Source of the DNA: Lepidodermella squamata
Lineage: Eukaryota; Animalia; Gastrotricha
Length of the DNA stretch: 64,000 nt
Reading direction: 5' to 3'
Assembly (NCBI GenBank): GCA_047495785.1
Contig: JBLDXI010000002.1
Location: 248,001-312,000, forward strand
Each line of letters opens with the position of its first letter. Positions within the stretch are counted from its first letter, which is position 1. The notes under the pieces are model-generated. The model did no database searches. It worked only from the letters and a program-made list of their open reading frames with translations, and had not been told where the DNA came from. Positions 12,211 through 50,748 of this stretch are shown in pieces. The translations under genes were made by a program, and so were the position numbers.

Positions 12211-12888
12211 TTATTCAAGTCTATAATCAATGACTCTCAGGGTGCTTTGAACTCGAAAGTAAACATCGCTATCAGCAATCGTGCTATCTGGCACAGGCCT
12301 GAACCGATTAGCAGCAACATTTTCATAGTTTCGACCTGTGACTGCTAATGCTTCTGCCTCGATTTCGAGTATCGAGGCGACTTTGACGATCAAAGGGTCA
12401 TAATCATCACCCAACAACGAAATCCGACCCTCCACTCGTGATTCTACCAGTTTCAGTGCATCAAACCTACGAATTCGATCGCTGCTCGCCCTAGGTCTTA
12501 TAGGCGGGGTCAAGTATACCCCAAGTGCAGTTGCGCCAGCAAAGCTTACTATGGTCAAAATCACAAGAACGAAAACGCCGAACCACTTCCTCTTGTTCAG
12601 CTTCGGGCTCCCTTCCCATAGTTGCGGCTTGTGCTCAGGCTTTTTCCATGGTTTCTCCAGAGCAGGGTCGATTATAATGACTTCATCGAGTTGATTCTTA
12701 CGCACGTAATCTTCGTATGACGCATACGTTGGTATTGCCGACATGGAATCGGACGGCGCAACGAAATTCCCATTTTGGGATTCAGAATGTATAATCTGCG
12801 TGGGAAATTGTGAGTTTTTCGCTTGGCAAAGAATTTGTTCATGCAGCAAACAGAGAGACAGCACAGTGGAAAATGTCGAAGAGGCCAT
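12211..12888 (-). CDS. Novel family member 1 (signal peptide, variable region, TM, conserved C-domain); divergent, inverted copy
   Basis: LSLCLLHEQILC signal; KRKWFGVFVLVILTIVSFAGATALGVYL TM; DRIRRFDALK...VEGRIS...KVASILE...NYE...RPVP....DSD.YF. Confidence 0.75.
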   Translation of the reverse strand: MASSTFSTVLSLCLLHEQILCQAKNSQFPTQIIHSESQNGNFVAPSDSMSAIPTYASYEDYVRKNQLDEVIIIDPALEKPWKKPEHKPQLWEGSPKLNKRKWFGVFVLVILTIVSFAGATALGVYLTPPIRPRASSDRIRRFDALKLVESRVEGRISLLGDDYDPLIVKVASILEIEAEALAVTGRNYENVAANRFRPVPDSTIADSDVYFRVQSTLRVIDYRLE

Positions 12889-12940
12889 CTAACCTTGATA
12901 TCTCATTCCTCTCAGGTCTCAGGTGCTGGTGAGAAGATTA

Positions 12941-12956
12941 TTGAGATGGGCTTTTT
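12941..12956 (-). promoter_or_regulatory. Family upstream motif (variant AAAAAGCCCATCTCAA on - strand)
   Basis: Ends ~52 nt upstream of the ATG at 12888, the same spacing as the + strand copies. Confidence 0.5.
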
Positions 12957-13252
12957 GAGAACGTTCAAACACTTAAATTACTCCACAAAACTTGAATTTT
13001 TCGAGTTTTATTCGGGCTCATTAAAATGCTCCATTCAATCACGAGTTCCCGAGTGAACAATACAGCTTTATGCTGCATTTGAGCTATTCCACTCCGAGTA
13101 CTCATTTTGCACAAATACTTACTAAAGCAAAACACAACGTTATTTGCGGCTTTTGAATAAAAGACAATGGCTAAGTCTTAGCGTAAAATGGCCAAATAAG
13201 TCTAACATTGCTTGAGTGGCATCTCGCTGCCTTTACGCATCACTGTGTTTAT

Positions 13253-15277
13253 ATGTCGCGTTTAACAACGTGTTGTAGTCGTTGCAGGTCAATTTTTCGC
13301 ATCTATTTAGCGAGATGTAGAAATATCAGACTTTTCTACCTGTTCATCGCTCTCGTCATCATATTGGCAATCTTTTTCATCGCAATCGGTATCAGAAATT
13401 CGACGAATAACAGCGAACAGCAGCAACATGTTGTAGCAACTACCATAAGCCCGGCTGAGAGACAGCGGCGAGTTGATGAAACCATGCGGCAGTTCAAATT
13501 TCCGGGCTGTCGAACATTAGAAAAATGGGCGCCGAATATGAACTTCATACAGCGATCGGCCGACACTGCCTGGGGACTATGGACTTTTTCGCATTATGAA
13601 ATCAATCGAATTGTACACTTTGTTTCGCTAGATCACCCAAAAGTCTTTAGTTTCAAGGTAAGTGAAAAATCAAAGAAAATACTGCTCTTATTTTCCTATT
13701 TTAAAGAATTTTTTGAGCCTGCTCAGTGCCATAAAATTTCTAGAACCCGACGAAATTTACATGCATTTCAATGCTGAACCAGTCATGGATGGCAGTTTGT
13801 ACAATCATTGGTGGCAAGAGGCCTTAGAAACAATCCCATTTTTGAACATCGTCTACAACAGCAATTATTCAACGGTTCAAAAACTGGCCAGAATAGAGCA
13901 ACAAGGCGGTGGTTTGGTAATACCATTAGAAGGAATCATATTCACTGGACAGGAGCTGAAAAATCCGCAACCTGAGGAAATATCAAAGGACAATATCGGT
14001 CAAGCTATTTCGACGCGATCGAAAATTTTGATGTTACTGCCCGGTATGTTACCAGGGTTTCTGGAATCCTTGAACCCGATCGCACCTTCAGGGGCCAAAG
14101 GGCTTAATTGCAAAAGCTACACCTCACAGCAACCCTTCACCGATCATCTACTCGATTTTTGTTATTCCATCAATCGTGACACTGAGGTCTATCCGAAGGA
14201 GTTCTTCTCCGGTTCTGATCAGTTTTCACAACTTGTTCGGTATTTGTTTTACGGATCGAAGCGAGAGATTGTACCAAGACCGGATGAAAGCCCTACTGGC
14301 AATGCGAAGGAGAAAGTTCCGCTGATTTGCCACTACATTTGGATCGAAGGGACTCCGCTGGAATTCGAAGCGTTCCTCAGCATGTTGAGCTGTTTGTTCA
14401 TCGTCAAGTAAGTAAAAAGGTTCATTGCATAACGAAAAATCTAAGTCATTGCTTTCAGAGCCGATGTTTACGTTCACGGAAGTTTGCCGCCGACCGGTAA
14501 AAGGTGGCGAAAATTACTCGCCCTGGGAGGTTCGAAGGTCCGCTACCTTGAAACTCAATTACCAACCAAAGTATTCCGGAATCCTGTTTCAGAGAGAGCT
14601 CACATCAGCGACGTTTGGCGAGTGGAAGCCCTCTTGCGATACGGTGGCATCTACCTGGATTGGGATGCCATTTTTGTGAAACCCTTGGATGACAAGATTC
14701 GGAGTCAAGAAGTTGTGTTGAGTTACGATGTAATGCCGTACAACCCGTATCCTAATATCATCAGCAATGGCGTAATGCTATCAAAATCGAACAGCTTCTA
14801 TTTCCGAGAAGTTCAGGTAACTTCTTCGGAAAATAGTTTGATGTTGTTTTGCTGATTTTTCACTTGTCATAGAGATCTATGAGATATTTCAATGCCATTC
14901 GAAATGACGATTACATCTTCCATGGCCTGCCTTATTTCTTCAACTCGCTAATGGCAACTTACAAAATCTACGAATGCTACCCGGAACGTGTTACAATCGA
15001 CCCGCATTTCCAGGCTATCTGCAACAACGGCCGATGCCATCCGACTTGGAAATCGAATTTTCTACAGGATGGAATTGATAATGAAGTCGATTGGCTGGGC
15101 GGTGAAGCTTATGCGCTACACAATACGTACCCGACGCCGCAGGAGTTTGTCAGTGAAAGCTACCTCGCATCGGCCAACCCATCGTCGCGGTACTATAAAA
15201 TTGCTATGAATGTGCTGAAGAACGCTAACTTGACTCTCTCTGATTTATCATCAACTTTCGGCATTAACTTATTTTAA
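13253..15277 (+). CDS. GT32 alpha-1,4-glycosyltransferase-like (A4GNT/A4GALT family), copy 1; 4 exons
   Basis: Type II TM; HISDVWRVEALLRYGGIYLDWD (DXD motif); ISNGVM. Introns 13658-13706, 14408-14458 and 14817-14872 are GT-AG and frame-consistent. Confidence 0.9.
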
Positions 15278-15328
15278 TAAAAATTTAGTTTTATCATTGA
15301 AAATACACCCGCTTGAGAGCTTTTTTTT

Positions 15329-15345
15329 AAAAAATTCTTCCTTAA
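15329..15345 (+). promoter_or_regulatory. Family upstream motif (AAAAAATTCTTCCTTAA)
   Basis: ~54 nt upstream of ATG 15400. Confidence 0.5.
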
Positions 15346-15399
15346 AACCTTTTCGGAGGCTGATCATTTCTCCTTCAACCCGATGTTGTGTAGTTCAAA

Positions 15400-16122
15400 A
15401 TGGGTAGGTGGCATAGAATGTTTGCCATTCTCAGCTCGTTCGCTCTACTTGGCTGTCAGATAATCGCATCGGAAGTAGAGCCGATCGACATGTCAGTTTT
15501 TGTCGATATGCCGCCTCGTGAAAGTTCGGTCGGTGCTAGATTACGAGCAGCTTCAGCCCTTATGGAAGGCTTCGTGGAAGACATAACCCCTCCGAAGCCT
15601 GTAACACCCCCAACAATTTATTCGCCTAAAATAAAGTTATTCCCAAAAATGCCGCCACGTGCTGAGTTGGAGCAGCCATTATTTAAGACTGGCTGGAGGA
15701 AAACTCTCGCTGTTGTCGGCAAAGTGGTTACGACAATCGCCGTGATTGCAGTTCTTACTGGTCTGACAGTTCTTTCTTTGAAAAAAGGCAGTAACCGGAA
15801 GGAAGAGAAGCCTGTTTATACCAATCGGTGGGCAGAAAGGGACAGGCTTGCTCGGCTTGAGCTGTTACGGACCTCAAATGCTGAAGGACGTATGGCCGAT
15901 GTGAGAGAGAAGCTTCCAGGGAGCATCATTTCGATCACATCATCAAAAAATAATATCATGCAGAAAATATGGCTTGGAAATGACGAGTTCATGGTGGAAA
16001 AACACTTTTTCCCAAATCCCGATCCAATTCAAGTAATGAGTGACGTTATCATTGCGTTTAGCAATATAATTGATTTGAGCTACGATTTTAGCGGCAACAA
16101 CTTATTCTCAGCAATTCTCTAA
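15400..16122 (+). CDS. Novel family member 2 (divergent)
   Basis: AILSSFALLGCQIIA signal, Pro-rich region, TM, then ERDRLARLELLR...EGR...N.E....FFPNP....D. Confidence 0.75.
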   Translation: MGRWHRMFAILSSFALLGCQIIASEVEPIDMSVFVDMPPRESSVGARLRAASALMEGFVEDITPPKPVTPPTIYSPKIKLFPKMPPRAELEQPLFKTGWRKTLAVVGKVVTTIAVIAVLTGLTVLSLKKGSNRKEEKPVYTNRWAERDRLARLELLRTSNAEGRMADVREKLPGSIISITSSKNNIMQKIWLGNDEFMVEKHFFPNPDPIQVMSDVIIAFSNIIDLSYDFSGNNLFSAIL

Positions 16123-16218
16123 AGGCCTTTCCAGTTTTGAGAAGTAATAAATAGCAGTTTGACCTTTGAGCTGACAGAATTGGCTTGACCCTTGAGCTAC
16201 TGCAATTTTAGACCTTTG

Positions 16219-16282: not shown

Positions 16283-17302
16283 ATGTATTGCGTTGCTTTG
16301 GTTTTCTCTCACGCAATATTGTTTGATCAGATCTTCGGGGCGATCCTCGGAAGATTGCGTCGTCAGCTGGATTGGGGTGACCAGCCGCCTCTACAGCCTA
16401 TATCTGGGATTTCCTTATGGAGTGATTCAAGTCCCATGGCGCAGTACACTAAAGATTTGGTTCCCGAGGCTGTGGCGTACCAAAAGTTCCTATCTCAGGG
16501 AATACATGATGGTCCACTGAAAACCTCAAAGCAGTACTTCCCACCGGGTGGACGAACTGATGAGTACAAACGCACACAGCCGTCTTTCGGCCGGAATGTT
16601 CAAAACTTGCCAATCGCAGGAGCAGGCAATGATGGACCAGTGGCCCCGGCGAATTCGGCACTACAATCGCTACCAGGCAGCTCGAAAGAGAACCCGGCTG
16701 TACTTGAGGAGAATTTACTTTTCGGGGATTACGTGATAGACGAGAAACCTGTCGGTAGACCAACTCCTGAAATATCGATAATTCCTCGCGAGCCCGTTCA
16801 ACGAAAGATATCAAGCCTCGACTCACCTTTGTCTGACGCTGTTGGGCCTCTGAATAATGATGGGTCGAGAAAAGGCAAATCCTTCGCCGAAAAAGCGAAA
16901 TCATTTTGGCAGCGGAATAAACGTGGAATTCTAATTGCTGGCGCTATTTTCGCCGCAATAGCGGTCATTGGAATTGTTGCTGGTATCACGTATGCTCTAA
17001 CAAGTCGGCGGGAGAATTCGAACTCCCGTAGGATCATAGAAGGAAACGACAGACAGCTGAGAGCAGGCCTGTTAACTAGCGATCAAATTTTGGGGAGAGT
17101 TGCCCATGATGAACAGGGAACGCTGTACGGTCGCGTTGCTATGTTAATGGAAGCAAGCAGTTCGGTTACGGGATTGATCGCTTTGAATTACGATATTTTG
17201 AGAATTCGAGAGGTTTTGCCGGCTCCTACGTCAGAGGCAGCCTCAACGGATACTTTGATACGTTTTGAAATACGGAGTGATGCTGCTTATTCCACTTATT
17301 AA
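16283..17302 (+). CDS. Novel family member 3
   Basis: HAILFDQIFG, RLRR|Q, FWQRNKR+TM, DRQLRAGLL...LGRV...LYGRVAMLMEASS. Confidence 0.88.
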   Translation: MYCVALVFSHAILFDQIFGAILGRLRRQLDWGDQPPLQPISGISLWSDSSPMAQYTKDLVPEAVAYQKFLSQGIHDGPLKTSKQYFPPGGRTDEYKRTQPSFGRNVQNLPIAGAGNDGPVAPANSALQSLPGSSKENPAVLEENLLFGDYVIDEKPVGRPTPEISIIPREPVQRKISSLDSPLSDAVGPLNNDGSRKGKSFAEKAKSFWQRNKRGILIAGAIFAAIAVIGIVAGITYALTSRRENSNSRRIIEGNDRQLRAGLLTSDQILGRVAHDEQGTLYGRVAMLMEASSSVTGLIALNYDILRIREVLPAPTSEAASTDTLIRFEIRSDAAYSTY

Positions 17303-17713: not shown

Positions 17714-18601
17714 TCAGGCTCTCGGTGGGATCAGTAGTTTGCTGATGACAGGCCACAAAGTCTCGAAAAACAACATGGTACCCATGTCTCCCAAGTGCTG
17801 ACCATCAATGAAAAAATTATCGGATAGAGAATCAGTATTAGTATCCTCCAACACTCGCCTAGCTCCAGCTTTTGTTGCCACATCATGGAAATCGATGAAA
17901 GTAGCTCCGATCAGTTCTGCTGCCACCCGACTAGCTACAGCGTACAAATCAACCTTGGAATTCGAGCGGTTGGAATACGGCAATACCCATGGGTTAGATT
18001 TACAATAATCCGCCCACTGCCTCTCATCGATAGGCGGAGGTGAAACGATAATGATTCGACTCCCTGTTAACACATTTGAACTTTCAATTAGCGACCGTGA
18101 TAGATAAACCAAATTGTCGACAAAGCGATCGATGGGCACATTTAGCAGCGGCGTGTCTGCAGCATCGTTTGAGCCATACATTATAACAACGCCGATTAAA
18201 TAGCCCAATTCGTCGGTAATCGAGGCTAAAATCTTCTGCCAAATTTGTCGGGCAGCTTCTGTAGTGAAGCCAGAGAAGCCACGGTTAACAACATCGCATT
18301 GACCTTTAACTTTGTTGGCAAGCATGGCCGACCAACTAGGTTTTTGGGCGTTTGCTGTCCAAGATGCTGTGTGCGAATCGCCCAGAAGTAAGATCTTCGA
18401 CATCGGATGCGTTCCGATTAAGCTTTGATTCCTATGAAAATACGATAATTTCTTTTAGCTTTGTAGAAATCGTTTGCATCAAGCATTGTAATCAACATGC
18501 CTTATGGACTTGGCTTCAATTTCAGCTTCAATGGAGTGACCCAAGGCTACGGCATTGAGCGCCACGCATACAAATGCGCATACAAGCTTTGCCGACATCA
18601 T
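17714..18601 (-). CDS. Secreted SGNH/GDSL esterase (IAH1-like), copy 1; catalytic residues intact; 2 exons with a GC-AG intron
   Basis: Exon 1 (18601-18501) MMSAKLVCAFVCVALNAVALGHSIEA is a signal peptide. Intron 18500-18432 (GCATGT...TAG). Blocks LLGDS, NRGFSG, YGSND and DGQH. Confidence 0.85.
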
Positions 18602-22760: not shown

Positions 22761-22871
22761 GGCGATGGAACTCTGTATGGCCGTGTTACCGTGGACATGC
22801 ATGCTAGCAACCCGATTGCAGCCTTAGTTTCGGAAAACTTTGAACTGCTGACGTTTCGAGACTTTTTCTAA
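22761..22871 (+). pseudogene. Relic of the family C-terminal domain
   Basis: Translates GDGTLYGRVTVDMHASNPIAALVSENFELLTFRDFF*; too short for the ORF track. Confidence 0.8.
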
Positions 22872-23059: not shown

Positions 23060-24194
23060 ATGCGACTGCTTGCTGTAATTTTATCCCACCGTATTCTGAC
23101 TGAACAAATAATATTCGGAGAATATAATAAGGATTTGAGGTTGCCGCGATTTCGTCGCCAGCCTGGTGGATTTCCCGTCCCAACCAGAACGCCAAACCTT
23201 GGCAATGATCATAGTGAGATAGATGCCGTAGCCAATGAACTCTCACCAAAGACCTAGTAGCGGAGTCTATTGAATACCAGAAAACCCTATCCAAGACATT
23301 AATCAATCCCCAGGCTTTAAATGAGTTCTCATTGATTGCTGAGGGCGATTTACCGAAAGCAAGGCTGTCAAAACCGAGTCGGCAACATGCAGTGGCGACT
23401 ATACGTCGTTTGAGACCTAAGAGTCCACTTGTGGACCCATCTGATCCTTCCCTAAATGATTACTTTCGACCTGGTGTTAAAACTGATGAGTGGAATCGTG
23501 TACAGGCTTCTTTCGACCGGTGTGTTTAAAACTTGCCAATCGCAGGAGCAGGCAATGATGGACCAGTGGCCCCGGCGAATTCAGCACTACAATCGATCCG
23601 GCTGTACTTGAGGAGAATTTACTTTACGGGGATTACGTGGATCACGAGAGACCTGTTGGTAGTCCACCACCGGAAATATAGGCTTTACCTCGCGAGCCCG
23701 ATATCAAGCCTCGACTCATCTCTGGATAAAGCTGTCGGGCCTTTAAATTATGACGGGTCGAGTAAAGGCAATTCCTTCGCTCGAAAGGCAAAATCGCTTT
23801 GGGAACGAAACAAACGAGGGATTAAAATTGCCGGTGCAGTTTTCGCCGCAATAGCTGTGATTGGAACTGTTGCTGGTATCATGTATGCTGTCACAAGAAA
23901 GAAGGAAAATTCGAGTTTCCGTGAGAGCATGGAAGCAAACGACAGACGCCTGAGAGCAGGCCTGTTAATTAGCAATGAAATGTTGGGGAGAGCTGCTTAT
24001 GCTGAACAAGGAACTCTGTACGGTCGCGTTGCTATGGTAATGGAGGCAAGCAGCTCGGTCACGGGATTGATCGCTCAGAATTTCGAGCTATTTAAGATTC
24101 GCGATGTTTGGCCTACCCCTACAGCAGAGGCAGCCTCAGGGGATACATTTATTTTGAAAAGATCTTGGGTGATGCTGCATACTCCACTTATTAA
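23060..24194 (+). pseudogene. Novel family member 5, frameshifted pseudogene
   Basis: LSHRILTEQIIFG...RFRRQPG start, several frameshifts and stops relative to member 3, and a recognisable TM and LYGRVAMVMEASS domain. A motif variant lies at ~22977-22992. Confidence 0.85.
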
Positions 24195-24309
24195 TTGTCA
24201 ATGAATTATCATAACAAAGAATCGCTTGGAATCACCCTGTTTGCGAGCTTGTGGTGAATTTCATCCGAAGTGTAAAGCGTTTAAACAAAGCAAAACGGCT
24301 AGTGCTGTG

Positions 24310-33197: not shown

Positions 33198-33669
33198 ACA
33201 TATTCGGTCCTATTCCTGGTAAACTTACTTACCTAATTTAATTTTTGTCAGATCATTGTTTTTCTTAGCTTTCCTGCTTCTAAATTTCTGCGTTGCTGTC
33301 GTTGAAGGAGAAAATGTTTTAACATCCGTGCGTCGATGGCCGAATATCAGCTATGCCTCTCAAATGTTCTTGGGCATTTAGTTTTGACGCTTTTTAAGCG
33401 TTATTCGAGCAATTTCGCTTTAAATATATGTGAAAATATCGTCAGTCGCTTCGCTCGTGAAGGATCTATGAGCGAATTAGCCTCGCCTAGCAAGAAAATG
33501 CATGAAAGTCACGATTTTGCCACGGTATAGAACAGCTAATTATGCATGTTTTCAGAGCAAAGAAAATTAGGCAGAATCTGCTCACTGCATCGCCAGTCAA
33601 AGACTCTACTTACAGCGTTGCTCGTGTTTACATTTGAAAACATTGTTTTCTCAATATAAGTATAGTACG

Positions 33670-36152: not shown

Positions 36153-37079
36153 ATGCCATCCTCAAAGCAACTTGAAATGTCTGGTAATTGTTTCCCATTG
36201 GTTTTATCCTTAGCCCTGCTCAGTGATCAAATTATTGCGAGATTGAGTTCCACGTCTCCAACTGAGATCCGCAGACTGCACCGACGACAGTTGAAGACTC
36301 AAGGCGCCACCTCGAATAACTACCGCGCCACTTTGGAAGAATATAATCTTGCAAATTTAGAGAAACAACTTCTAGGTTACAACACATGGAATCCTCCGAC
36401 TGGGGACACGCTACCGGGCTCACCTAGCGCCAGCCATCCAATTCCTATTCTGAAACCTGGTAGAAGATTTAAAATTCCGTGTCTTGACTTGCCACCGAGT
36501 GAACTCTTAGATTCAGCTATTGGACAAAAGGACCAATTCAGTCCTGTAATACCCTCGATCAGCCACAAGAAACATGTTCGATCAGCTTATGACCTCCCTC
36601 TAGGTTCGTCTGGACTTACCAACAATCCAATTAAAGGTCCCCCTCCTGGCCCTCATCAATCACAAAGGTTTAATCTCAAGAACGGCCTCATAACGATTGG
36701 AACAATTCTAGTAGCAACGTTATTGGTTGGATTAGTTGCAAGCTTGAAAGTTTTCCTTGCGGAGAAAATCATGGAAAATCGTGCGAAAAATGACCACCCC
36801 TTGCAAAAGGATCGCGACACCCGAATGCAAATGCTATCTGGTGTGAAGGATGTAATAGGACGAACAGCTTTGGATGAAGAATCGCTCTACGGAAGAGTTA
36901 CCATGATTATTCAGGAAAGTCCGCAAATTCGTGGGTTGGTGGAACAGAACGTTGACATGATTCGAATGTTGAATCTGTGGCCATCTCCGACGCAATCCAG
37001 CGTTCGAGGAGATTCGTATCACCGTGTGGCTCAGGGACTTCAAAGGGTCGACTACAGCGCTGGGGAAACCGACATATAG
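36153..37079 (+). CDS. Novel family member 6
   Basis: LALLSDQIIA, RLHRR|Q, TM, DRDTRMQML...GR...LYGRVTMIIQESP...WPSPT. Motif variant AAAAATCTTCCTGAA at 36115-36129. Confidence 0.88.
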   Translation: MPSSKQLEMSGNCFPLVLSLALLSDQIIARLSSTSPTEIRRLHRRQLKTQGATSNNYRATLEEYNLANLEKQLLGYNTWNPPTGDTLPGSPSASHPIPILKPGRRFKIPCLDLPPSELLDSAIGQKDQFSPVIPSISHKKHVRSAYDLPLGSSGLTNNPIKGPPPGPHQSQRFNLKNGLITIGTILVATLLVGLVASLKVFLAEKIMENRAKNDHPLQKDRDTRMQMLSGVKDVIGRTALDEESLYGRVTMIIQESPQIRGLVEQNVDMIRMLNLWPSPTQSSVRGDSYHRVAQGLQRVDYSAGETDI

Positions 37080-38811: not shown

Positions 38812-40056
38812 ATGGTTTCTCGCAGAAGGCAAAGCATCGCCATTTTGGTGTCGTTCCTTGTGCTCACTGATCAATTTTTCGCTTCGGCTCTTAAGGCACA
38901 GCCAGTTCCAGGCCATGAAAACTCACCCCGATTGCACCGTCGAGCTGATCCTGATCCTGATTCCAATCCGTCGCGAGTAAGATTCACCCAGCCAATCTCG
39001 GCAGAAGCTAGCGTAGAGCCGGTGAGGAGCTTTCTTGAACGCGCTGGTGTAGCGGTATCCGGGCCGGAAGCCAGCTCTTCTAGCGTTCGATTTCGCCCGC
39101 CGAATCTTCAAATCGACCCCGCAGCGAATTTAGACGACATAGTCGGGCCTACTGATGGACTTCGACCAATTGCCGACCGCACTCCAACGCCCTATCCTAG
39201 GGGAGATGAACAAGGTCGGCCGAAAAAGTGGCGCCCACCAACTCCATTCCCCGGCGAAGAAGCTGCAAAGCCGCCGAAGAAGTGGCGCCCGCCAACTCCA
39301 TTCCCCGGCGAAGAAGCTGCAAAGCCCCCGAAGAAGTGGCGCCCTCCGACACCATTCCCCGGCGAAGAAGCTGCAAAGCCCCCGAAGAAGTGGCGCCCTC
39401 CGACACCATATCCGGGGGGACCAGATGCTGGGCCTGCAGATAACGCTGGCGGTTCCAATTCTCAACAAGTGTTCTTCGGACCGGATTTCGAAATGCCCGA
39501 AGCAGGTGAGCAATCGCAACCAGAAGCTCAAAGCCCTGGGTCTCCTCAAAACTCACCTGATAGAAGCCTGGTTCCGTCAAATGCCGGCCCACTTGCAACC
39601 ACTGGATCAAGGCGTAACACGTTGCCGGCCTTTAATTATCGACCAGTTCTAGCCGGTATGGTTATTGGTGCTTTTCTCACAGTAATTGCTGCAGCCTTCG
39701 CATATTCGATCGTGAATGTAGTAAAAAGATTTGTGAATGATGAAAAGAAGGATCCCAGTGATGACATGGCTGAGAAGGATCGACTTGTCAGGGTTGATTT
39801 GCTGAAAGGCGGTGATCAAGCTCTGGGGCGCGTTTCTGCAAATACTGACGATGTTTACGGCCGAGCAACTGTCATCATGCAAGCCAGCAAGCCTATTCAA
39901 CAAGTAATTGGTGCTAATTTCGAATACCTCTCGATGCCGTATCTCTGGCCCAGGCCTACGGACTTGGAGGCGAGAAGTGATCAATTCGCTAAGATTGGAG
40001 ATGGCCTAGTGGCAAGTGACTACATCACAGAGGCATTAGAATTGCTCTACGTCTAA
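38812..40056 (+). CDS. Novel family member 8, with an 18-aa tandem repeat
   Basis: LVLTDQFFA, RLHRR|A, RVRF, (PKKWRPPTPFPGEEAAKP)n, TM, VYGRATVIMQASKP...WPRPT. Confidence 0.9.
   Translation: MVSRRRQSIAILVSFLVLTDQFFASALKAQPVPGHENSPRLHRRADPDPDSNPSRVRFTQPISAEASVEPVRSFLERAGVAVSGPEASSSSVRFRPPNLQIDPAANLDDIVGPTDGLRPIADRTPTPYPRGDEQGRPKKWRPPTPFPGEEAAKPPKKWRPPTPFPGEEAAKPPKKWRPPTPFPGEEAAKPPKKWRPPTPYPGGPDAGPADNAGGSNSQQVFFGPDFEMPEAGEQSQPEAQSPGSPQNSPDRSLVPSNAGPLATTGSRRNTLPAFNYRPVLAGMVIGAFLTVIAAAFAYSIVNVVKRFVNDEKKDPSDDMAEKDRLVRVDLLKGGDQALGRVSANTDDVYGRATVIMQASKPIQQVIGANFEYLSMPYLWPRPTDLEARSDQFAKIGDGLVASDYITEALELLYV
39220..39417 (+). repeat. 54-bp coding tandem repeat, ~3.7 units
   Basis: Unit CCGAAGAAGTGGCGCCCNCCNACNCCATTCCCCGGCGAAGAAGCTGCAAAGCCN; differences between units are mostly synonymous. 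Confidence 0.95.
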
Positions 40057-40768: not shown

Positions 40769-41719
40769 ATGGAGCTTTGCATGAAGATGATTTCTCCTAG
40801 AAAGAAGACTATTGCGCTTGTTATTTCGATAGCCGTTCTCAGCGATCAAATTTTCACATCCGCCCTTCAAGCCAAGCTGCTGAATAGATCATCTCGCCTT
40901 AATCGACGCGCTGTGTACGAAAAGTTCAGCGATCTGCCGCCATGGGGCCAGCAGGACCTTCGAAATCGTAGGTTAGCCGCCATTAAGCGATACCTCGAGA
41001 ATCGGGGCGTTCCGGTTTCTGGACCTAATGCAGCATCCGCTCCCTCTACTCGAGGCCGAGGTCGGCCATTACGTGTAAACACGAATGCTAGAGTAACGAC
41101 TTTGGGTGACTTGATGGGCCCAACGGACGGGCTTCAGCCTCTGGTTGACCTGGCTTCAATGGCATCCGATGTTTCGTTGCTACCTGGGCGAGGAATAGTC
41201 GCTCTTGCTAACTTACCAGGAAGCTCAATCTCTCGCCCCAACTCTCCAGTAAGGTCCGATTTGCAAAGATCAAAAGTTGCGGCCACTTTATCATGGAATA
41301 GTGAACTAGTAGTTGCGGGTGTTGTCATCGCTGGAATCATTGCATTTACCATAGCGGCTATTGGCTATGAATGGCTGCAAGCGCATAATTCAAAAATAAA
41401 GAAGCTAGAAGATCGGGTTGCTGAGCAGGATAGGAAAAAACGACTTGACAAGCTGGGTTGGGGCGGACGTTATGACGTATATGGGCGAACTGCTTCTGCT
41501 GAAGATATCGACAGCGTTTACGGCCGTGTAACAGTTATCATGCAAGCGAGCAAGCCGATTCAGCATATGGTTGGCGAAAACTTCGATGCTCTTTCGATGC
41601 CTGTAATCTGGCCCTGTCCGACTAATCGTGAGTCAGTGAACGATCAGTTTTTGAAAATTGGCAATACCTTGAGAGATAGCGATTACGTCATCAAAGAAAT
41701 TGAATCCCTCTACATTTGA
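40769..41719 (+). CDS. Novel family member 9
   Basis: IAVLSDQIFT, RLNRR|A, LMGPTDGLQP, TM, VYGRVTVIMQASKP...WPCPT. Motif AAAAATCCACCTTTA at ~40652-40666. Confidence 0.88.
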   Translation: MELCMKMISPRKKTIALVISIAVLSDQIFTSALQAKLLNRSSRLNRRAVYEKFSDLPPWGQQDLRNRRLAAIKRYLENRGVPVSGPNAASAPSTRGRGRPLRVNTNARVTTLGDLMGPTDGLQPLVDLASMASDVSLLPGRGIVALANLPGSSISRPNSPVRSDLQRSKVAATLSWNSELVVAGVVIAGIIAFTIAAIGYEWLQAHNSKIKKLEDRVAEQDRKKRLDKLGWGGRYDVYGRTASAEDIDSVYGRVTVIMQASKPIQHMVGENFDALSMPVIWPCPTNRESVNDQFLKIGNTLRDSDYVIKEIESLYI

Positions 41720-41772: not shown

Positions 41773-41787
41773 AAAAGTCCCCCTTAA
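41773..41787 (+). promoter_or_regulatory. Family upstream motif (AAAAGTCCCCCTTAA)
   Basis: 47 nt upstream of ATG 41835. Confidence 0.65.
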
Positions 41788-43072: not shown

Positions 43073-44008
43073 ATGAATGGTAAACTTCACCGCAGTTACG
43101 CGCCACTCATTTCAGTGCTGCTCTTGAACGAACAAATCTATGCCGTAATTATCAATGCCGTCATTCCGATTAAGACGCGCATACTTTATCGCCGACAGCC
43201 AGCTGGAGCATATGAAGCCCCGCCGCCGTCGTATGAAGCTACTATGAACGGGATACGGATGAGCATCCGTCAAAGACTTGAGCGCCTTCAATTAGCACTT
43301 GATAATCCACCGCATGGCAATGCCCAATTACTACCAGGTCAATTGCGTCCATTAACTGTAGTTACCCCACCGCCCTACCCTGGGACCGCTGGAGGAAATA
43401 ATTTGGGCAACGTCGTAGGGCCTGCTGAGCAGCAGATTCCAATTATGCCGCATTTTCCAAGGCTTGGTGATCGACAGAGTGCGCCTCCGTTACCAACTGA
43501 GCCGCCGCCCTCTTATGAAAGCCTGTCAAAACCTCGATTCACTGATCGCGTGAAGAAATTCTGGGCAGAACATAAAGGCAAGATAAAAGTTGTGGCAATA
43601 GCCTTCGTGGTGTTGCTGAGTTCTATTGGACTTGGAATTTTGTTTGGTCACCTATTCAAGGACAAAAGCGAACCTACGCCGATAACTCCAGTGGTTCCCT
43701 CTAATAAGATCCAGAGTAAGGGCGAGGATGATAGGAAATTGAGAACGAAGTACCTATTGGGCCAAGATGAGCTGCTTGGCAGATCGAGCTTTGGCGCGGC
43801 GGAATTTTACGGAAAAATGACTGGATTGATAACGGGCAGTCCCCTTATTAGCTCTGGGGTTCTTGAAAATTTCGATTATCTTCGAGTCAAGGATACATGG
43901 CTATGTTTGAATGAATCAGTCGTGCAAATTGATATTCTGTTGAGATTGGATGGTGGGTTATTTTCAGATGACTACAGCACTCAAGATGACGCGATAAATG
44001 ATATTTGA
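43073..44008 (+). CDS. Novel family member 11, with three PPxY motifs
   Basis: LLLNEQIYA, LYRR|QP, PPPSY/PPPY/PPPSY, FWAEHKGK+TM, FYGKMTGLITGSP...NFDYLRVKDTW. Confidence 0.88.
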   Translation: MNGKLHRSYAPLISVLLLNEQIYAVIINAVIPIKTRILYRRQPAGAYEAPPPSYEATMNGIRMSIRQRLERLQLALDNPPHGNAQLLPGQLRPLTVVTPPPYPGTAGGNNLGNVVGPAEQQIPIMPHFPRLGDRQSAPPLPTEPPPSYESLSKPRFTDRVKKFWAEHKGKIKVVAIAFVVLLSSIGLGILFGHLFKDKSEPTPITPVVPSNKIQSKGEDDRKLRTKYLLGQDELLGRSSFGAAEFYGKMTGLITGSPLISSGVLENFDYLRVKDTWLCLNESVVQIDILLRLDGGLFSDDYSTQDDAINDI

Positions 44009-44820: not shown

Positions 44821-45825
44821 ATGAATTGCCGCCAACTCTTCCCGGATGATTCCTGTCCCCTTATAATACTTGCTCTTCTAAATTTACTGATCCATGGATA
44901 TGCGGAAGATTCTTATTCACGAAAGCATGTCGGATCAAATGGCAAACTACTCCGTCGGCCGCGGGGTTTATCTTCGGCCGCCTTTTCAGCCGGGTCCTCC
45001 GGACTGTACTTCACACTCAAATTATACGACTGGTATCACAACAGAAATAGGGCTCCACCAGCGTTAGAGTCTTCTCCTTCCAACTCAGTTCGTATCCCCG
45101 CAAATTATGCTGACCGAAATCTTTATGACCCACTGGTTAATCCCTTTTACGGCCCGCAACTCTCGCCCGCCCCGGATAATAAGCAGTATGACTGGGCCGC
45201 GTTAAGAGCAACGATGCATGAATCTGATTTAGATCCGTTGTATTACGCTGTTGAGAGGACTGACGATATCAAGCCGATAATTCCAGAGAAAATCGTGGAA
45301 TACCCAACCCCGGCAAGTCCTCCAATGGCCCAACCGATTCCAGAGAGCAAACCGACTTCATTCAACGTCCCCGTGGTTGATAAGCCGCCGAAATCGTTTT
45401 GGTCGCGTCATGGGGAAAAAATACTATTGGCAGGTGCTGTTTTCGTATCCCTTCTAGTATTCTCGGCCATAGGATACGGCCTCAGTAAAGCAATTAAAAC
45501 TCTAAAGCAGGATAAAGAAGCCAGGCAAATCATGGATGAAGAAATGAAAAAACTCGATAGAAACACGAGAGCCGCTTTGCTGACTGGTAGCAATGGCGTG
45601 GAGGGGCGCTCTTCTGATCAGGATTTCGACTACATTTACGGCCGCGTGACAGTCATTTTACAAGCAAGTCGACCTGTTGAATCGCTGATTGCTGAAAACA
45701 TTGAAATTGTATGGCGCCCGCAACCATGGCCATCGCCGGATGCTGCAACAGTACAGGGTGATACATTTCATCAAATTGTGAAAGGAGTGAGTCTAGAAGA
45801 CTATGCTGTATCAAATTTTGAATGA
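44821..45825 (+). CDS. Novel family member 12
   Basis: Signal peptide, RRPR|G, NPFY, FWSRHGEK+TM, DRNTRAALL...EGR...IYGRVTVILQASRP...WPSP. Confidence 0.88.
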   Translation: MNCRQLFPDDSCPLIILALLNLLIHGYAEDSYSRKHVGSNGKLLRRPRGLSSAAFSAGSSGLYFTLKLYDWYHNRNRAPPALESSPSNSVRIPANYADRNLYDPLVNPFYGPQLSPAPDNKQYDWAALRATMHESDLDPLYYAVERTDDIKPIIPEKIVEYPTPASPPMAQPIPESKPTSFNVPVVDKPPKSFWSRHGEKILLAGAVFVSLLVFSAIGYGLSKAIKTLKQDKEARQIMDEEMKKLDRNTRAALLTGSNGVEGRSSDQDFDYIYGRVTVILQASRPVESLIAENIEIVWRPQPWPSPDAATVQGDTFHQIVKGVSLEDYAVSNFE

Positions 45826-46009
45826 GAAACGCAATTGTGAATGCGCGATGAATAAAAACAATGAATTGGTTATAGGCGCGTTATATGAATAGGCGTTACA
45901 CGCAGGTGAGGTCACGCGCTATTGATGCGCGGTGTCTCATTCAGAAAGTGCGCCTCAATAATGCCACACGCCTACTGTTCACAATGCGCACATGCATTGT
46001 TTGAAAATT

Positions 46010-46408
46010 ATGTCTTGGCTTGTTCGCTTAGCGAGGAAAAATTTCAGAAATTTTGTTCTCGGTGCGCTACTATCTGTAGCGTTGTCAACTATTGTTTTGG
46101 TCACGATTTATATTCCTCCGTACCGCGGTAATCCGATCACATATGAAGAGCACAGACAACAAATGGCGGAAGCGCGGAGGCAGTTTAAGTTCATCGGCTG
46201 CGGGACGCTCGATCGATCGAGTGCTAATATTACGAAAACAAGACCGCTGGACACGGTTTGGGGCAGTTGGCTGTTTGAAAATTACAACCTCAAAAGAATG
46301 GTTCATTTTGTTGCGACTGAAAGCCCCATCACATTCACATTCAAGGTAATTTCATTAACACAAAACTTCATCTTTAAATTAGGATAATTATATTTCCTAA
46401 ATTTATTA

Positions 46409-46444
<36 letters not shown>

Positions 46445-48129
46445 AGAATTATTTGCCTACAAAAATTAACTCATCGATTAAAATAACTGTAATTCATAAA
46501 TACAACTAATTTTACAGAATTTCCTGAGCGTGCTAAGTGCGCAGCGGTTTCTCGAGCCAGATCAAATAATCATACACCTGAAATCCGAACCGGAGCCGGA
46601 TTTGAGCAGCTATCACCATTGGTGGCAAGAAGCGCAAGAGACCATACCTTTTCTAGTCGTTAATTACTACACCGGATTGTCGCTCTCTCAATTGCTGGTG
46701 AATATTCAGAATGGCGGCGGAGGTATTATCGTCCCGCTTTCTGGCATTATTTTCACTGGCGGAGAACCTGTCGTCTCGCGAATGGTCGACTTGGGTTCAG
46801 TCAATAATCTTTTTTCAAGAAAAGATTCAGTTTTTCTAACCCACCCGGGTACATTACCGGGCGCGCTCGAAATTTTGAACCCTCTAAGTTATACATCAAT
46901 CAAAAAGTAATTGAACTTCTCTTGAAGTTTTCCTATGCTTCATCTGTTACTCCTTTGATAGGGTCGCATGCGAAGATTATAAATCTGTTGGTGCGAAAAT
47001 GGGATTCTGTTTCTTTTTCAACCCCGAAAAGGAGCTGTATCCACGGGATTTCATGACCGCTGATGACCAAATTTCTGGGCTGGCACGGTACTTGTTCTAC
47101 GGGAATCGACTGCAAATCGCTGCTCAACCAAGCCCTGGAAAAATACCTCTCATCTGCCACTACATATGGATCAACGGTACACCGCTAGAGTTCGAAGCTT
47201 TTCTTAGCATGCTCAGCTGCTTGTACATTGCTGGGTAAGTCCGTCCTACATTTGCCAGTTTTGCCAGTACATTCGATTTGCCAGTTTTTTACTCGTCATA
47301 TTTTCAGGGCTGATGTTTACGTGCATGGAAGTTTACCGCCCTCTGGCAAGCGATGGGTGAAACTCAATGAATTGGCCGGTTCCAGGGTTCGATACATTGA
47401 AACTCAACTTCCGACCTCTGTCTTCGGAAATCCCGTGACAGAACGAGCCCACATCAGCGATGTCTGGCGAGTTGAGGCCTTATTGCGATACGGTGGGATC
47501 TACCTGGACTGGGACGCGTTTGTCGTGAAACCCTTAGACGACCGAATTAGAAGCTATGATGCAGTACTAGCCTTTGATGTAATGTCTTACCCAGACTACC
47601 CTAATATCATCAGCAATGGCGTCATGATTGCAAAACCAAACTCCTTCTACTTCAGACAAGTTCAGGTAAGTACAGAGCTTTGACCGAATCGTAAAATTAT
47701 GTCGAATTTTGTTAACAGAAATCTATGAGATATTTCAGAGCTGAGCAGACTGAGTTTACGGGTAAAGGCCTGCCTTACTTCTACAACTCTCTTTTCGTGA
47801 CCTACAAAGTGTACGAATGCTATCCCGACCATGTGCTAATCGACCCTCATCTCCAAGCAATCTGCAATAAAGGTCGTTGCCATCCAACGTGGAAAGACAA
47901 CTATCTAGTCGATGAGATCGATACGCCAGTCGATTGGATGGGTGGCGAAGCGCATTTCTTGCACAACACCTATCCTACCCCAAATGAATTCTATAGCGAG
48001 AGTTACTTGGCAAACGCGAAGAATCACAGCTCACCATATTACAAAATCGCAATGAAAATCCTGAAGAGTGCTAATTTAACACTTGCTGAGCTCAATTACT
48101 CACATTCAGGTCTTAGCATTGACCAATAA
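46010..48129 (+). CDS. GT32 alpha-1,4-glycosyltransferase-like, copy 2; 5 exons
   Basis: Identical HISDVWRVEALLRYGGIYLDWD. Three introns are shared with copy 1, plus an extra intron at 46907-46961. Start is 46010 or 45992. Confidence 0.9.
46414..46442. repeat. (ATT)n microsatellite in intron 1 of GT32 copy 2
   Basis: About nine ATT units. Confidence 0.9.
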
Positions 48130-48137
48130 AAAAATGT

Positions 48138-48152
48138 AAAAGTCCACCTTGA
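48138..48152 (+). promoter_or_regulatory. Family upstream motif (AAAAGTCCACCTTGA)
   Basis: 46 nt upstream of ATG 48199 and only 8 nt after the GT32 stop codon. Confidence 0.65.
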
Positions 48153-48198
48153 ATTTTAAACCCGTGGGATATTTTTCCGAAGTGAAATCGTGGCTACG

Positions 48199-49439
48199 AT
48201 GACAGCTGCGAAAAGCTTTGGTGTCATACTCTCTTATGCTTTGCTGATAGATCAAATTTTCTGTTGGGCTATTCGCGGCTATCATCCGCGCAGAAAAAGA
48301 CAGCCAGACTTCCTTGATAGCGATAGTTCGAGTTCAGATGAATCCGGCTATTCGACAGATAGCGATAACGTATTTTTCAATGCACGAGTTCGTGGCGTAT
48401 ATGAAGGCATAGAATTCCCTCTTATGGATGCGCCGAGAGAAGGTGCTGAGCGATTCCTCAAGGAGCCACGATTGTCAAAAAAGTATCCTGGAATTGGTGC
48501 ACCAATGCCAGTCGTAAAACCGCCATTCATATTCAATGCTCCGCCTCCTGGGAGACGGCAGCGGCAGCGTGGTCCTATTAGGCTGCCAGGTGCGCCAGAT
48601 TTTGACCCGCCACCTATTCCCAATAATAGACCTATCAGGCTACCAGGGGCTCCTGACTACGACCCGCCGCCAATTCCTAATGTCCCACCGTGGAGACCCG
48701 ATAATTCCCTCAACTAGCGATCGACGCCGTTAGTCAGGCGGAAATCAACCCACAGGAAAGAAATTTAGCTGATCAACTTTTCGGAGCAAATGCCCAAGCC
48801 CAACCTGAGAGGGGCCAACCTGTAAGGCAACCTCAGGGCGAATTTGAAATGAAGCCAATCCCAGGACCACCATCATTGGAAGATCAATTTGCACCAAGAG
48901 CTACTGCCAATCAGGTTTTCGGAGCGAATTCGCAAGCGAATCCTGATGAGAGGGGCGTGGTGAGAAAGCCAGATAACTCAGTTCAAATCGAATTGGAACC
49001 TTTACCACGCCCGAATGAAGTTAGAAAGCCGGATGAAGTTCGCCCTGCAGTTCCTATTCGGAATGGTGTCCGGCAAAGGATGAGGTACTGGAGGCCGTTC
49101 GTAGCCGCAGCAGTTGTGGGGGTTCTTGTAATCGCGACTGTTATTGGTCTGGCAATTTATTTATCGTCTAACAGTGATAAGAACGATTTCAAAGATCGGA
49201 ATCTGAGAGCTGAATTCCTGTCAGAAAAAATGGGAAATAGGATCGAGGGCCGAAACACCGCGGAGGACGTTAATAGCCGGATAGCAAAAGTGTTTGAAAC
49301 CAGCAAACCTGTTGTGGCGATGTGGCGGGGAAATATGGATGTTTTATTCGCAGTTTCGAGTCTGCCCAATCCAACAAAAGAATTAGCAGCTGGAGATACT
49401 TTCAATGCGCTAGACAATTTTAGTGATTACGATCTTTGA
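48199..49439 (+). pseudogene. Novel family member 13, split by a single-base frameshift at ~48705 (pseudogene, soluble variant or assembly error)
   Basis: The 5' ORF (YALLIDQIFC, RRKR|QP) ends at 48717. The -1 frame is open from 48705 (FPQLAIDAVSQ...) through the TM and KDRNLRAEFL...EGR to 49439. Confidence 0.75.
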
Positions 49440-49590
49440 AGGTGTGTGAGGCAATGAAAAAGCAAACAGCAATAAAAGATATAGGGTACTGTATTTCAAT
49501 GAGATAGACATAAATTAATGGAAATCCATATACGATACAACAGTCCTTCCTTTTATTTACACAGGTGTCTACGGCAAGCAAGAAATCTCA

Positions 49591-49606
49591 AAAAATACCA
49601 CCTTAA
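49591..49606 (+). promoter_or_regulatory. Family upstream motif (AAAAATACCACCTTAA)
   Basis: 44 nt upstream of ATG 49651. Confidence 0.6.
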
Positions 49607-49650
49607 TCAAAATTGAATTGACCTTGTCGACTGTGGGGCATCGATTCGAA

Positions 49651-50748
49651 ATGGTAACAATGAGCTGTCGCTTTTCAGCTTGGCATTGTCTAATACTATC
49701 ATTCTCACTCCTTTTTTACGAACTTGATGGATCTACCCTTTTGTTGCAGCAATCCCCGGGATCTCGCGACGCTCAGCGATTCCCACGATCTACCTCTCAA
49801 AAGGAAGCACAGGGACACGGAAATCAAAGGCGTATGGACCCCCTCGATCAAATTATTGAAGAAATATCAGCCTATTCAGACTTGTCTGACGGAACACTAG
49901 AACGCCTAATCCACATTTTCCCTTCGGCAGATGAAAATGTAGAGTATGTCCCGTCTTCAGTCGTATCTCGAGGATATGCAAAGGGTAAGCGTAAATTGAG
50001 CGATCCGTCCCAGGATATCCAAATCAAGACTGAGGCTCAGAGGAATACAGCAAAGCTACCTGTTGCACCACCGCCCTTGCCAACTGTCGAAATCGATGAA
50101 TTCGGTCTGCCATCTCTTGCAAGTAAAGATGCAGTCGAAAATTACGTTCGCGCCACGAGAGTTGAATACGACTTGAGCGATCTGCGCAAAGCCTTGCTGG
50201 ACGATGATTACGCAGCGAAACTCATGGTTACCCCGCCCGCTCTTCAGGAAAAATTGTCATTCCAGGTAGATGAATATGGGCTTCCAATGCTTCCACAAGC
50301 TGAAACTGAGCCTAAATCTGTTGGTTCAAAGGTGAAGCTATGGTGGGCAGTAAATCGCAACAAAGTGATTGTGTATGTTCTCGCTTTTGTAGGACTAATT
50401 GCTATTGGTGTTGCGATAGGTCTTGCCATAAATTACTTTGATCCTAAAGAAAACCCCAAATACTCCGGTCAAAGGAGCGATCGTGATTACAGGATGAAGT
50501 CTCTCGGGCAGTCCAGTTCAGCCGAAGGTCGGACAACTGCTTTGAATCAGGAGTTAACAAGCTTGCTAGCAGCTCGTATTGCCGCTAGTGAGCCTATCAA
50601 AGCGATATGGCGTGACTATGTCGGAAATATGCCGTCAAGCAGCGCGTTACCAGTCCCAATCAAAGAAGTCGTTAATGCAGATTTATTTCACACCATAGAA
50701 GATACAACAGCAGCGATAGAATATTATATCATTAGTAATGGAATTTAG
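49651..50748 (+). CDS. Novel family member 14 (divergent)
   Basis: Signal peptide, RFPR|S, DEFGLP/DEYGLP, WWAVNRNK+TM, DRDYRMKSL...EGR...ASEPI...LPVP...D.F. Confidence 0.82.
   Translation: MVTMSCRFSAWHCLILSFSLLFYELDGSTLLLQQSPGSRDAQRFPRSTSQKEAQGHGNQRRMDPLDQIIEEISAYSDLSDGTLERLIHIFPSADENVEYVPSSVVSRGYAKGKRKLSDPSQDIQIKTEAQRNTAKLPVAPPPLPTVEIDEFGLPSLASKDAVENYVRATRVEYDLSDLRKALLDDDYAAKLMVTPPALQEKLSFQVDEYGLPMLPQAETEPKSVGSKVKLWWAVNRNKVIVYVLAFVGLIAIGVAIGLAINYFDPKENPKYSGQRSDRDYRMKSLGQSSSAEGRTTALNQELTSLLAARIAASEPIKAIWRDYVGNMPSSSALPVPIKEVVNADLFHTIEDTTAAIEYYIISNGI

What the first reader, a model, noticed from the sequence alone, without database searches (positions are those of the whole stretch)
12211..50748. 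Large unrecognised intronless gene family with a fixed scaffold and a hypervariable middle: candidate modular effector or recognition system
Seen: 14 full-length loci (12 intact, 2 frameshifted) plus 4 relics share one architecture. It runs: signal peptide usually ending L..(D/E)Q(I/L)F; in most copies a basic RxxR/RxRR site, often followed by Q(P); 60-270 aa of largely unalignable Pro/Ser-rich sequence; often FWxx(N/H)K, then one hydrophobic helix; and a conserved ~90-aa domain DRxxRxxLLxG...GR...(L/I/V)YGRVTVIMQASxP...NF(E/D)xL...WPxP...D.F...DY. I recognise no known domain in it. Established: RxxR/Rx(K/R)R is the furin/proprotein-convertase consensus. Inference: a birth-and-death array of processed secretory proteins with a conserved anchoring or delivery module and a variable payload, as in parasite effector, venom or gamete-recognition families.
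Basis: partly seen in the sequence, partly recalled or inferred. Interest (0 to 1): 0.92.

Follow-up and report, generated by a model that had tools for sequence, protein, structure and literature searches.

The report
Orphan membrane-protein gene family, gastrotrich
A small freshwater animal, very probably the gastrotrich Lepidodermella squamata, carries more than 50 single-exon genes for membrane proteins with a fast-changing, floppy outer part and a conserved inner tail that matches nothing known; the family is real and new, but its function and expression are untested.

Summary
The window has 12 intact single-exon copies, 2 broken copies and 1 clear relic of one family.

Shared architecture:
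- a cleavable-looking signal peptide with a conserved end motif;
- usually an RxxR/RxRR site, often followed by Q(P);
- 56-231 aa of Pro/Ser-rich, Cys-free, nearly unalignable sequence;
- a Trp-plus-basic juxtamembrane motif and one ~23-aa helix;
- a conserved ~100-120-aa C-terminal domain.

The family is larger than reported: 56 matches in the 121-Mb genome, on six contigs but mostly on the window's contig.

No relative or known domain turned up. I tried a profile search of 1.84 billion proteins, two word-indexed searches, a metagenome scan, Pfam, PDB sequences and fold searches.

The genes look functional. Synonymous sites are saturated while the frames stay open. Tail omega is 0.15-0.4 in seven of the nine pairs where it could be estimated, and 0.66 and 0.85 in the other two. 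Thirteen of 14 copies have the genome's common promoter-proximal motif, mostly 45-65 nt before the ATG.

Best reading: convertase-processed type I surface proteins with a disordered ectodomain and a new cytosolic tail. PSGL-1 and syndecans are analogues in layout, not kin.

Effector, venom and gamete roles have no support. No RNA run holds the locus. Processing and topology are inferred, and the charges around the helix argue mildly against the simple topology.

The parts
12211..12888 (-). Copy a, intact, 225 aa, divergent; lacks the RxxR site
   Evidence: HMM E 2e-28
15400..16122 (+). Copy b, intact, 240 aa, divergent; lacks the RxxR site
   Evidence: E 7e-35
16283..17302 (+). Copy c, intact, 339 aa; RLRR then Q; RNKR just before the helix
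21528..22631 (+). Copy d, intact, 367 aa; RVRR then QP; nearest paralogue of c (tail 77% identical)
22761..22868 (+). 36-aa relic of the tail domain
   Evidence: E 3e-8
23245..24204 (+). Copy e, broken in several frames; c/d-like
36153..37079 (+). Copy f, intact, 308 aa
37483..38601 (+). Copy g, intact, 372 aa from the first ATG; RLHRR then QP
38812..40056 (+). Copy h, intact, 414 aa; four tandem Pro-rich repeats in the ectodomain
40769..41719 (+). Copy i, intact, 316 aa
41835..42722 (+). Copy j, intact, 295 aa from the first ATG
43073..44008 (+). Copy k, intact, 311 aa; three PPxY motifs in the variable part
44821..45825 (+). Copy l, intact, 334 aa
48190..49439 (+). Copy m, split by one frameshift within 48700-48717 (N-terminal half 48190-48717, C-terminal half 48705-49439); keeps RRKR then QP and the promoter-proximal motif
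49651..50748 (+). Copy n, intact, 365 aa, divergent
41773..41787 (+). Example of the promoter-proximal motif AAAARTCCNYCTTAA. Thirteen of the 14 copies have one on their own strand, 24-103 nt (mostly 45-65) before the ATG. The other sites start at 12941(-), 15331, 16219, 21461, 36115, 37421, 38733, 40652, 43005, 44761, 48138 and 49592.
   Evidence: the motif is genome-wide

Best explanation
These are functional, single-exon genes of an old, lineage-restricted family of single-pass type I membrane proteins. Inferred pathway: a cleavable signal peptide takes the chain into the ER. A furin-type proprotein convertase removes a short basic propeptide of 5-20 aa at RxxR/RxRR, which often leaves an N-terminal Gln-Pro that could cyclise to pyroglutamate. 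The mature protein then shows a disordered, Pro/Ser-rich, Cys-free ectodomain, nearly free of N-glycan sites, on the cell surface or the apical matrix. It is held by one ~23-aa helix. A conserved, mostly helical cytosolic tail of ~100-120 aa, a new domain, links every paralogue to the same intracellular partner for sorting, cytoskeletal attachment or signalling. The ectodomain diverges fast, and tandem duplication plus decay drives the family. Shown: the family, its architecture, its size, purifying selection on the tail, and the absence of detectable relatives. Inferred: cleavage, topology, location and partner.
For: Family and architecture. Genome-wide there are 56 matches on contigs C2, C48, C15, C42, C19 and C17. 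Signal peptide: basic n-region, hydrophobic run of median 11 aa and a small-x-Ala cleavage-like site; the membrane helix has median length 23 aa. The basic site sits at a conserved position, followed by Q(P), in paralogues with saturated dS. The ectodomain is exposed to selection typical of the secretory lumen: 1 N-x-S/T sequon against 11 for the reversed pattern and 11.1 after shuffling, and 1 Cys in 1971 aa, whereas neighbouring genes have 77 sequons against 53 expected. Selection: tail omega is 0.15-0.4 in seven of the nine pairs where it could be estimated and 0.66 and 0.85 in the other two, with open frames of 225-414 codons kept despite dS above 1. Own promoters: the genome's common motif lies 24-103 nt (mostly 45-65) before 13 of 14 ATGs, and a poly(A) signal follows the stop in 10 of 12 copies. 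Tail model: helices, mean pLDDT 74. Nine window copies form one local clade with 93/96 support, which indicates expansion in place.
Against: No RNA evidence: the only run that holds the locus is DNA. The charges around the helix do not favour a cytosolic C-side: the N-flank averages +3.9/-0.8 and the C-flank +3.1/-2.2. Some distant members have CC clusters on the N-side, which resemble cytosolic palmitoylation sites. Sequons are also somewhat depleted in the tail. The basic site is missing in about 15 of 37 members. The tail model has pTM of only 0.30, so a compact fold is not established.
Confidence: 0.55

Rival explanations
1. Membrane-tethered precursors. The helix and tail only route the precursor, for example into a regulated secretory compartment. 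Convertase cleavage at both ends, after the propeptide and at the basic cluster just outside the membrane, releases the variable Pro-rich polypeptide as the active secreted product.
For: A basic cluster directly precedes the helix in most members. In copies c and d it is a full RxKR-type site (RNKR), and dibasic pairs occur there in many others. The ectodomain has no Cys and almost no N-glycan sites, as in many processed peptides. The upstream RxRR-Q(P) site is conserved.
Against: The juxtamembrane basic cluster is not a consistent RxxR consensus across members and always comes with a conserved Trp, so it may be an interface motif. The ectodomains contain no conserved peptide core that a receptor could read. 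Nothing shows cleavage.
Confidence: 0.2
2. Inverted topology. The conserved C-terminal domain is the extracellular or lumenal functional domain, and the variable Pro-rich part is cytosolic and carries short linear motifs.
For: The N-flank of the helix is the more positive side, so the positive-inside rule puts it in the cytosol. CC or CCxGCC clusters lie on that side in the C15, C17 and C2:831k members. Copy k has three PPxY motifs, which are usually cytosolic WW-domain ligands. Sequons are also low in the C-terminal domain.
Against: The N-terminus is a textbook cleavable signal, with a hydrophobic run of median 11 aa that is too short for an anchor and a basic n-region. It should force the following segment into the lumen. 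A conserved furin-type site makes sense only in the lumen. Sequon depletion is strongest in the variable part. The C-terminal domain has no Cys.
Confidence: 0.1
3. An effector, venom or gamete-recognition family under diversifying selection.
For: Conserved signal and pro-region with a hypervariable middle, and tandem birth and death. One young pair on contig C15 has ectodomain omega 1.85 at dS 0.10 over 130 codons.
Against: The host is very probably a free-living, largely parthenogenetic gastrotrich (and the scan notes; its biology is from general knowledge). There is no Cys framework. Almost all pairs are saturated, and ectodomain omega is 0.2-0.9 where it can be measured. The proteins are membrane-anchored. 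There are no expression data.
Confidence: 0.07
4. Mostly silent or decaying lineage-specific ORFs without present function.
For: No RNA run in the index holds 9.8 kb of the array. Two of 14 copies are broken and relics exist.
Against: Twelve frames of 225-414 codons are open although synonymous sites are saturated. Tail omega is well below 1 in most measurable pairs. Conserved residues persist across six contigs. Promoter-proximal motifs and poly(A) signals are in place.
Confidence: 0.05

Closest known systems
PSGL-1 (SELPLG) and other sialomucin-type type I membrane proteins (from general knowledge, not tested by homology)
   Same: The same order of parts: signal peptide, a short propeptide removed at a paired-basic site that leaves an N-terminal Gln, a Pro/Ser/Thr-rich disordered ectodomain, one helix, and a cytosolic tail that docks to intracellular adaptors.
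   Different: There is no sequence or fold relation. Here S+T is only about 13%, repeats are seen in only one copy, and the tail is the conserved part. The family has more than 50 members, not one.
Syndecans
   Same: A variable, disordered ectodomain with a conserved transmembrane and cytosolic part; single-pass type I.
   Different: The Pfam Syndecan domain is not matched. The tail here is about three times longer and has different motifs. No conserved Ser-Gly glycosaminoglycan sites were seen. Copy number is far higher.
Parasite variant surface families with conserved ends and a hypervariable middle (RIFIN/STEVOR, PfEMP1 with its conserved cytosolic ATS, T. cruzi MASP)
   Same: A conserved signal region, a hypervariable exposed part, a conserved membrane and cytosolic end, and large clustered families that grow by duplication and decay.
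   Different: The host is a free-living animal, there is no export motif of those families and no homology. Antigenic variation has no obvious role here.
Conotoxin-type secreted-peptide superfamilies
   Same: A conserved signal peptide and pro-region with a dibasic cleavage site in front of a hypervariable mature part.
   Different: The mature part here is long (56-231 aa), free of Cys and followed by a membrane helix and a conserved tail.

Membership tests
Any Pfam family (C-terminal domain or whole protein) | Score above the gathering threshold of a Pfam-A model | tested here: not met
   Eight window members and 28 genome-wide members: no hit near any threshold, and the best hits are scattered with E of 0.02 or worse.
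Any protein family represented in public genomes and metagenomes | Detectable sequence relative outside this genome | tested here: not met
   Profile search of 1.84 billion representatives: 0 hits. Word-indexed searches with one protein and with a 28-member alignment: 0 hits. Metagenome contig scan: 0 hits. Gastrotrich proteomes appear not to be in these libraries, so relatives within the phylum are not excluded.
Known protein folds (PDB, ESM Atlas) | Structural match of the tail model | tested here: inconclusive
   Foldseek against the PDB gave 0 matches. Atlas TM-scores were 0.42 or lower. VIA-align gave only long-helix matches with Z of 5.1 or lower. The models have pLDDT 70-74 and pTM 0.30, so they are too weak to claim a new fold.
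Proprotein-convertase substrates | RxxR or Rx(K/R)R consensus in a lumenal position | tested here: met
   An RxxR-type or dibasic site at residues 24-50 in 10 of 12 window copies and an RxxR-type site in the first 100 residues in 21 of 37 members overall, about 11 of them followed by Q, mostly QP.
Proprotein-convertase substrates | Actual cleavage at the site | not testable with these tools
   Needs N-terminal proteomics.
PSGL-1-like sialomucins | Homology to SELPLG and mucin-type Ser/Thr-rich repeats | tested here: not met
   No homology was found. Ectodomain S+T is 10-22% and Pro 9-21%, and tandem repeats are seen only in copy h.
Syndecans | Syndecan transmembrane and cytoplasmic domain (Pfam Syndecan) | tested here: not met
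   No Pfam hit.
Venom or toxin peptide superfamilies | Conserved cysteine framework in the mature part | tested here: not met
   1 Cys in 1971 ectodomain residues in the window and 13 in 5645 genome-wide.
Gamete-recognition or effector families under diversifying selection | dN/dS above 1 in the variable part | tested here: inconclusive
   dS is saturated in most pairs. Measurable ectodomain omega is 0.2-0.9. One young pair gives 1.85 over 130 codons, with tail omega 0.85.
Type I single-pass membrane proteins | Cleavable signal peptide plus one stop-transfer helix with a cytosolic C-terminus | tested here: inconclusive
   Signal-peptide features and a 23-aa helix are present, but the flank charges favour the opposite orientation. 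No dedicated predictor or experiment was available.

The most novel reading that the evidence does not exclude
A gastrotrich-specific cell-surface system. Dozens of paralogues present different disordered ectodomains on one constant, previously unknown cytosolic signalling or sorting domain. That would make it a variable-outside, constant-inside recognition or matrix-patterning repertoire (for example cuticle or scale assembly, adhesion, or microbe sensing), built on a domain with no relative in any other sampled organism.
Probability: 0.15. Interest if true: 0.75.

Novelty: new variant of a known kind. Interest (0 to 1): 0.5.

Why it matters
Gastrotrichs are almost unexplored at the molecular level. 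A family of more than 50 genes with a conserved domain that matches nothing in billions of proteins is likely to sit behind lineage-specific biology such as the cuticle or scales, adhesion, or surface recognition. It also gives a clean case for studying two things: how a disordered ectodomain can diverge beyond recognition while a signal-peptide motif, a processing site and a cytosolic tail stay fixed, and what a conserved tail of unknown fold binds. Large orphan families are common in poorly sampled phyla, though. Without expression or localisation data this is a well-defined lead, not a discovery of mechanism.

Tried and rejected
- Fold searches with two AlphaFold models gave only generic long-helix matches or nothing.
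- The RNA evidence failed. Laying its unitigs showed even ~90-100x cover across genes and spacers and two haplotypes, which says nothing about expression.
- I first took the upstream motif AAAARTCCNYCTTAA for a family-specific regulatory element. I rejected that: it has 1028 exact sites genome-wide against 13 for the reversed control, and it precedes unrelated genes.
- An operon reading of the tightly packed same-strand copies (spacers of 115-813 nt) is unlikely, because each copy has its own promoter-proximal motif and most have a poly(A) signal.
- The acidic-dileucine and YxxPhi sorting motifs in the tail are not kept consistently across subfamilies (inspection).
- Literature searches found the genome paper but nothing on such a family.
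Full report
**1. Observation**

The window (G000 contig C2:248001-312000) is animal DNA. The neighbours of the family are:
- a GT10 fucosyltransferase (10409-11857);
- two GDSL esterases;
- three class-C-GPCR-like genes with an ANF-receptor domain;
- on the minus strand, a polycystin-1/REJ/PLAT/PKD-channel gene and a C-type lectin.

- There are 12 intact single-ORF copies (coordinates under parts).
- Copy m is split by one frameshift within 48700-48717. The unitigs of run X1 show no indel variant there, but that run is probably the assembly's own data.
- Copy e (23245-24204) is broken in several frames.
- There is one 36-aa relic (22761-22868, E 3e-8).
- I could not reproduce four relics.

Region by region, mean pairwise identity among the 12 intact window copies, with the shuffled control in brackets:

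| Region | Identity | Shuffled |
|---|---|---|
| First 35 aa | 0.22 | 0.14 |
| Middle (ectodomain) | 0.18 | 0.16 |
| Juxtamembrane + helix | 0.25 | not run |
| Tail | 0.26 | 0.08 |

So "fixed scaffold, hypervariable middle" is accurate. Only the nearest paralogues keep islands of similarity in the middle.

**2. Extent**

A profile of the window's tails found 29 matches in the 121-Mb, 151-contig genome, all on C2. A broader profile found 56 matches. They lie on C2 (72-838 kb), C48, C15, C42, C19 and C17. I extracted about 37 distinct full-length members.

Even the most distant members keep these features:
- a basic n-region and a short hydrophobic run, followed by a polar-aromatic motif of the type (N)(D/E/Q)(Q/H)(I/F/L)(F/H/Y);
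- often an R/KxKR or RxRR site followed by QP;
- a Trp-plus-basic cluster just before a ~23-aa helix;
- a tail with D..R...L, (V/A)EGR, P.P, D.F and DY, which is DYDGG in some subfamilies.

In a maximum-likelihood tree of the tails, nine window copies (c, d, f-l) form one clade (93/96). That indicates expansion in place. Copies a, b and n sit on long branches with members elsewhere, and those placements are unreliable.

**3. Are they genes?**

- For most pairs synonymous sites are saturated (pS 0.6-0.85), yet frames of 225-414 codons are open.
- Tail omega is 0.15-0.4 in seven of the nine pairs where it can be estimated; the other two, both on C15, give 0.66 and 0.85. Ectodomain omega is 0.2-0.9.
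- One young C15 pair gives 1.85 for the ectodomain over 130 codons, which is too little to claim positive selection.
- The c/d pair has lower dS in the 3' half (0.33 against 0.83), so it may have undergone gene conversion or be a mosaic.
- Thirteen of 14 copies, including broken copy m, carry AAAARTCCNYCTTAA on their own strand, 24-103 nt (mostly 45-65) before the ATG. The window has 17 matches against 3.0 expected.
- The motif is not family-specific. The genome has 1028 exact sites against 13 for the reversed control, and it precedes unrelated genes, often about 50 nt before their first ATG. I read it as a general promoter-proximal element. It argues that each copy is its own transcription unit.
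- Ten of 12 copies have AATAAA or ATTAAA within 150 nt after the stop.
Expression is therefore unshown.

**4. Anatomy and likely mechanism**

- The N-terminus has the features of a cleavable signal: a K/R-rich n-region, a hydrophobic run of median 11 aa, and a small-x-Ala site four to five residues after the conserved polar motif.
- The basic site follows 5-20 residues later. RxxR/Rx(K/R)R is the established furin/proprotein-convertase consensus, and an N-terminal Gln can cyclise. Both steps are inference here.
- The variable part is 56-231 aa, 9-21% Pro and 10-22% Ser+Thr, with essentially no Cys.
- In the window clade the variable part has almost no N-glycosylation sequons: 1 N-x-S/T against 11 for the reversed pattern, 8-14 for neighbouring spacings and 11.1 after shuffling. 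Neighbouring genes have 77 against 53 expected. Selection against N-glycans implies exposure to the ER lumen, which fits an ectodomain.
- The tail models are helical with moderate confidence (pLDDT 70-74, pTM 0.30-0.31).
- The best-supported reading is therefore a convertase-processed type I membrane protein with a disordered ectodomain and a conserved, new cytosolic module.

Three observations do not fit neatly.
- The N-flank of the helix is more positive than the C-flank (+3.9/-0.8 against +3.1/-2.2).
- Some distant members have CC clusters on that side.
- Sequons are also somewhat depleted in the tail, although conserved Asn columns explain part of that.

They keep an inverted-topology rival alive at about 0.1. 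The basic cluster next to the membrane, which is a full RNKR in c and d, also allows a tethered-precursor model in which the ectodomain is released.

**5. Comparison with what is known**

Nothing matched.

| Search | Result |
|---|---|
| Pfam, 8 and 28 members | no hit |
| HMM profile against 1.84 billion representatives | no hit |
| Word-indexed searches of 5.8 billion clusters | no hit |
| JGI metagenome contigs | no hit |
| PDB sequence profiles | no credible hit |
| Foldseek (PDB), VIA-align, Atlas by structure | no credible hit |
| Atlas by features | no credible hit |

These libraries evidently lack gastrotrich proteomes, since the window's own proteins were not returned. The family may therefore be phylum-wide rather than species-specific.

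In layout the closest analogues are PSGL-1-type sialomucins (signal, propeptide cut at a paired-basic site leaving Gln, Pro/Ser/Thr-rich stalk, helix, adaptor-binding tail; from general knowledge) and syndecans. Parasite variant families and conotoxin superfamilies share the conserved-ends, variable-middle logic. Membership in each was tested and not met (see the membership table).

**6. Organism**

Earlier scan notes suggested the gastrotrich Lepidodermella squamata. The published assembly is 122 Mb in 157 contigs (PMC11660948), against 121.2 Mb in 151 contigs here. That is consistent but not proof. A free-living bacterivore makes the effector and venom analogies unlikely (general knowledge).

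**7. Verdict**

This is a real, large orphan family with a sharply defined architecture and a new conserved domain. Function, expression, processing and topology are all untested. Interest is moderate: it is a solid lead for gastrotrich biology and for the study of disordered ectodomains on a constant tail, but large lineage-specific families are expected in unsampled phyla.

Noticed in passing
window 41773-41787 and 16 other sites in the window; genome-wide: The motif AAAARTCCNYCTTAA occurs 1028 times exactly in the genome against 13 for the reversed control. It lies about 50 nt before the first ATG of many unrelated genes, so it looks like a general promoter-proximal element of this animal. 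I do not know what it is.
   Followed up: partly
window 25110-27401, 29348-31641, 33634-35976: Three tandem class-C-GPCR-like genes (ANF-receptor ligand-binding domain plus a seven-helix part) are each encoded almost without introns. The middle one is split into two ORFs (29348-30337 and 30379-31641), by either a frameshift or a short intron.
   Followed up: no
window 51410-63340, minus strand: A polycystin-1/REJ-type gene lies in a few very large ORFs (PKD, REJ, GPS, PLAT and polycystin channel domains), next to a C-type lectin gene. The large exons suggest an intron-poor receptor locus.
   Followed up: no
window 17714-18403 and 19713-20510, minus strand: Two paralogous GDSL/SGNH esterase genes are inserted between family copies c and d.
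   Followed up: no
window 16283-17302 vs 21528-22631: Copies c and d have much lower synonymous divergence in the 3' half (dS 0.33) than in the 5' half (0.83). This points to gene conversion or a mosaic origin.
   Followed up: partly
L061 (C15:4185500-4195499), L064 (C17), L065 (C2:829000-834500): Distant family members carry CC or CCxGCC clusters immediately before the membrane helix. Copy k in the window (43073-44008) has three PPxY motifs in the variable part.
   Followed up: partly
window 45900-50800: The unitigs of run X1 show two haplotypes at roughly equal depth at several sites (for example 45937, 45968, 50320-50400), so heterozygosity data for this locus already exist.
   Followed up: no
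C2:226406-226804 and C2:231505-231903 (L027, L028): Identical family copies about 5 kb apart indicate a very recent segmental duplication within the C2:217-233 kb subcluster.
   Followed up: no
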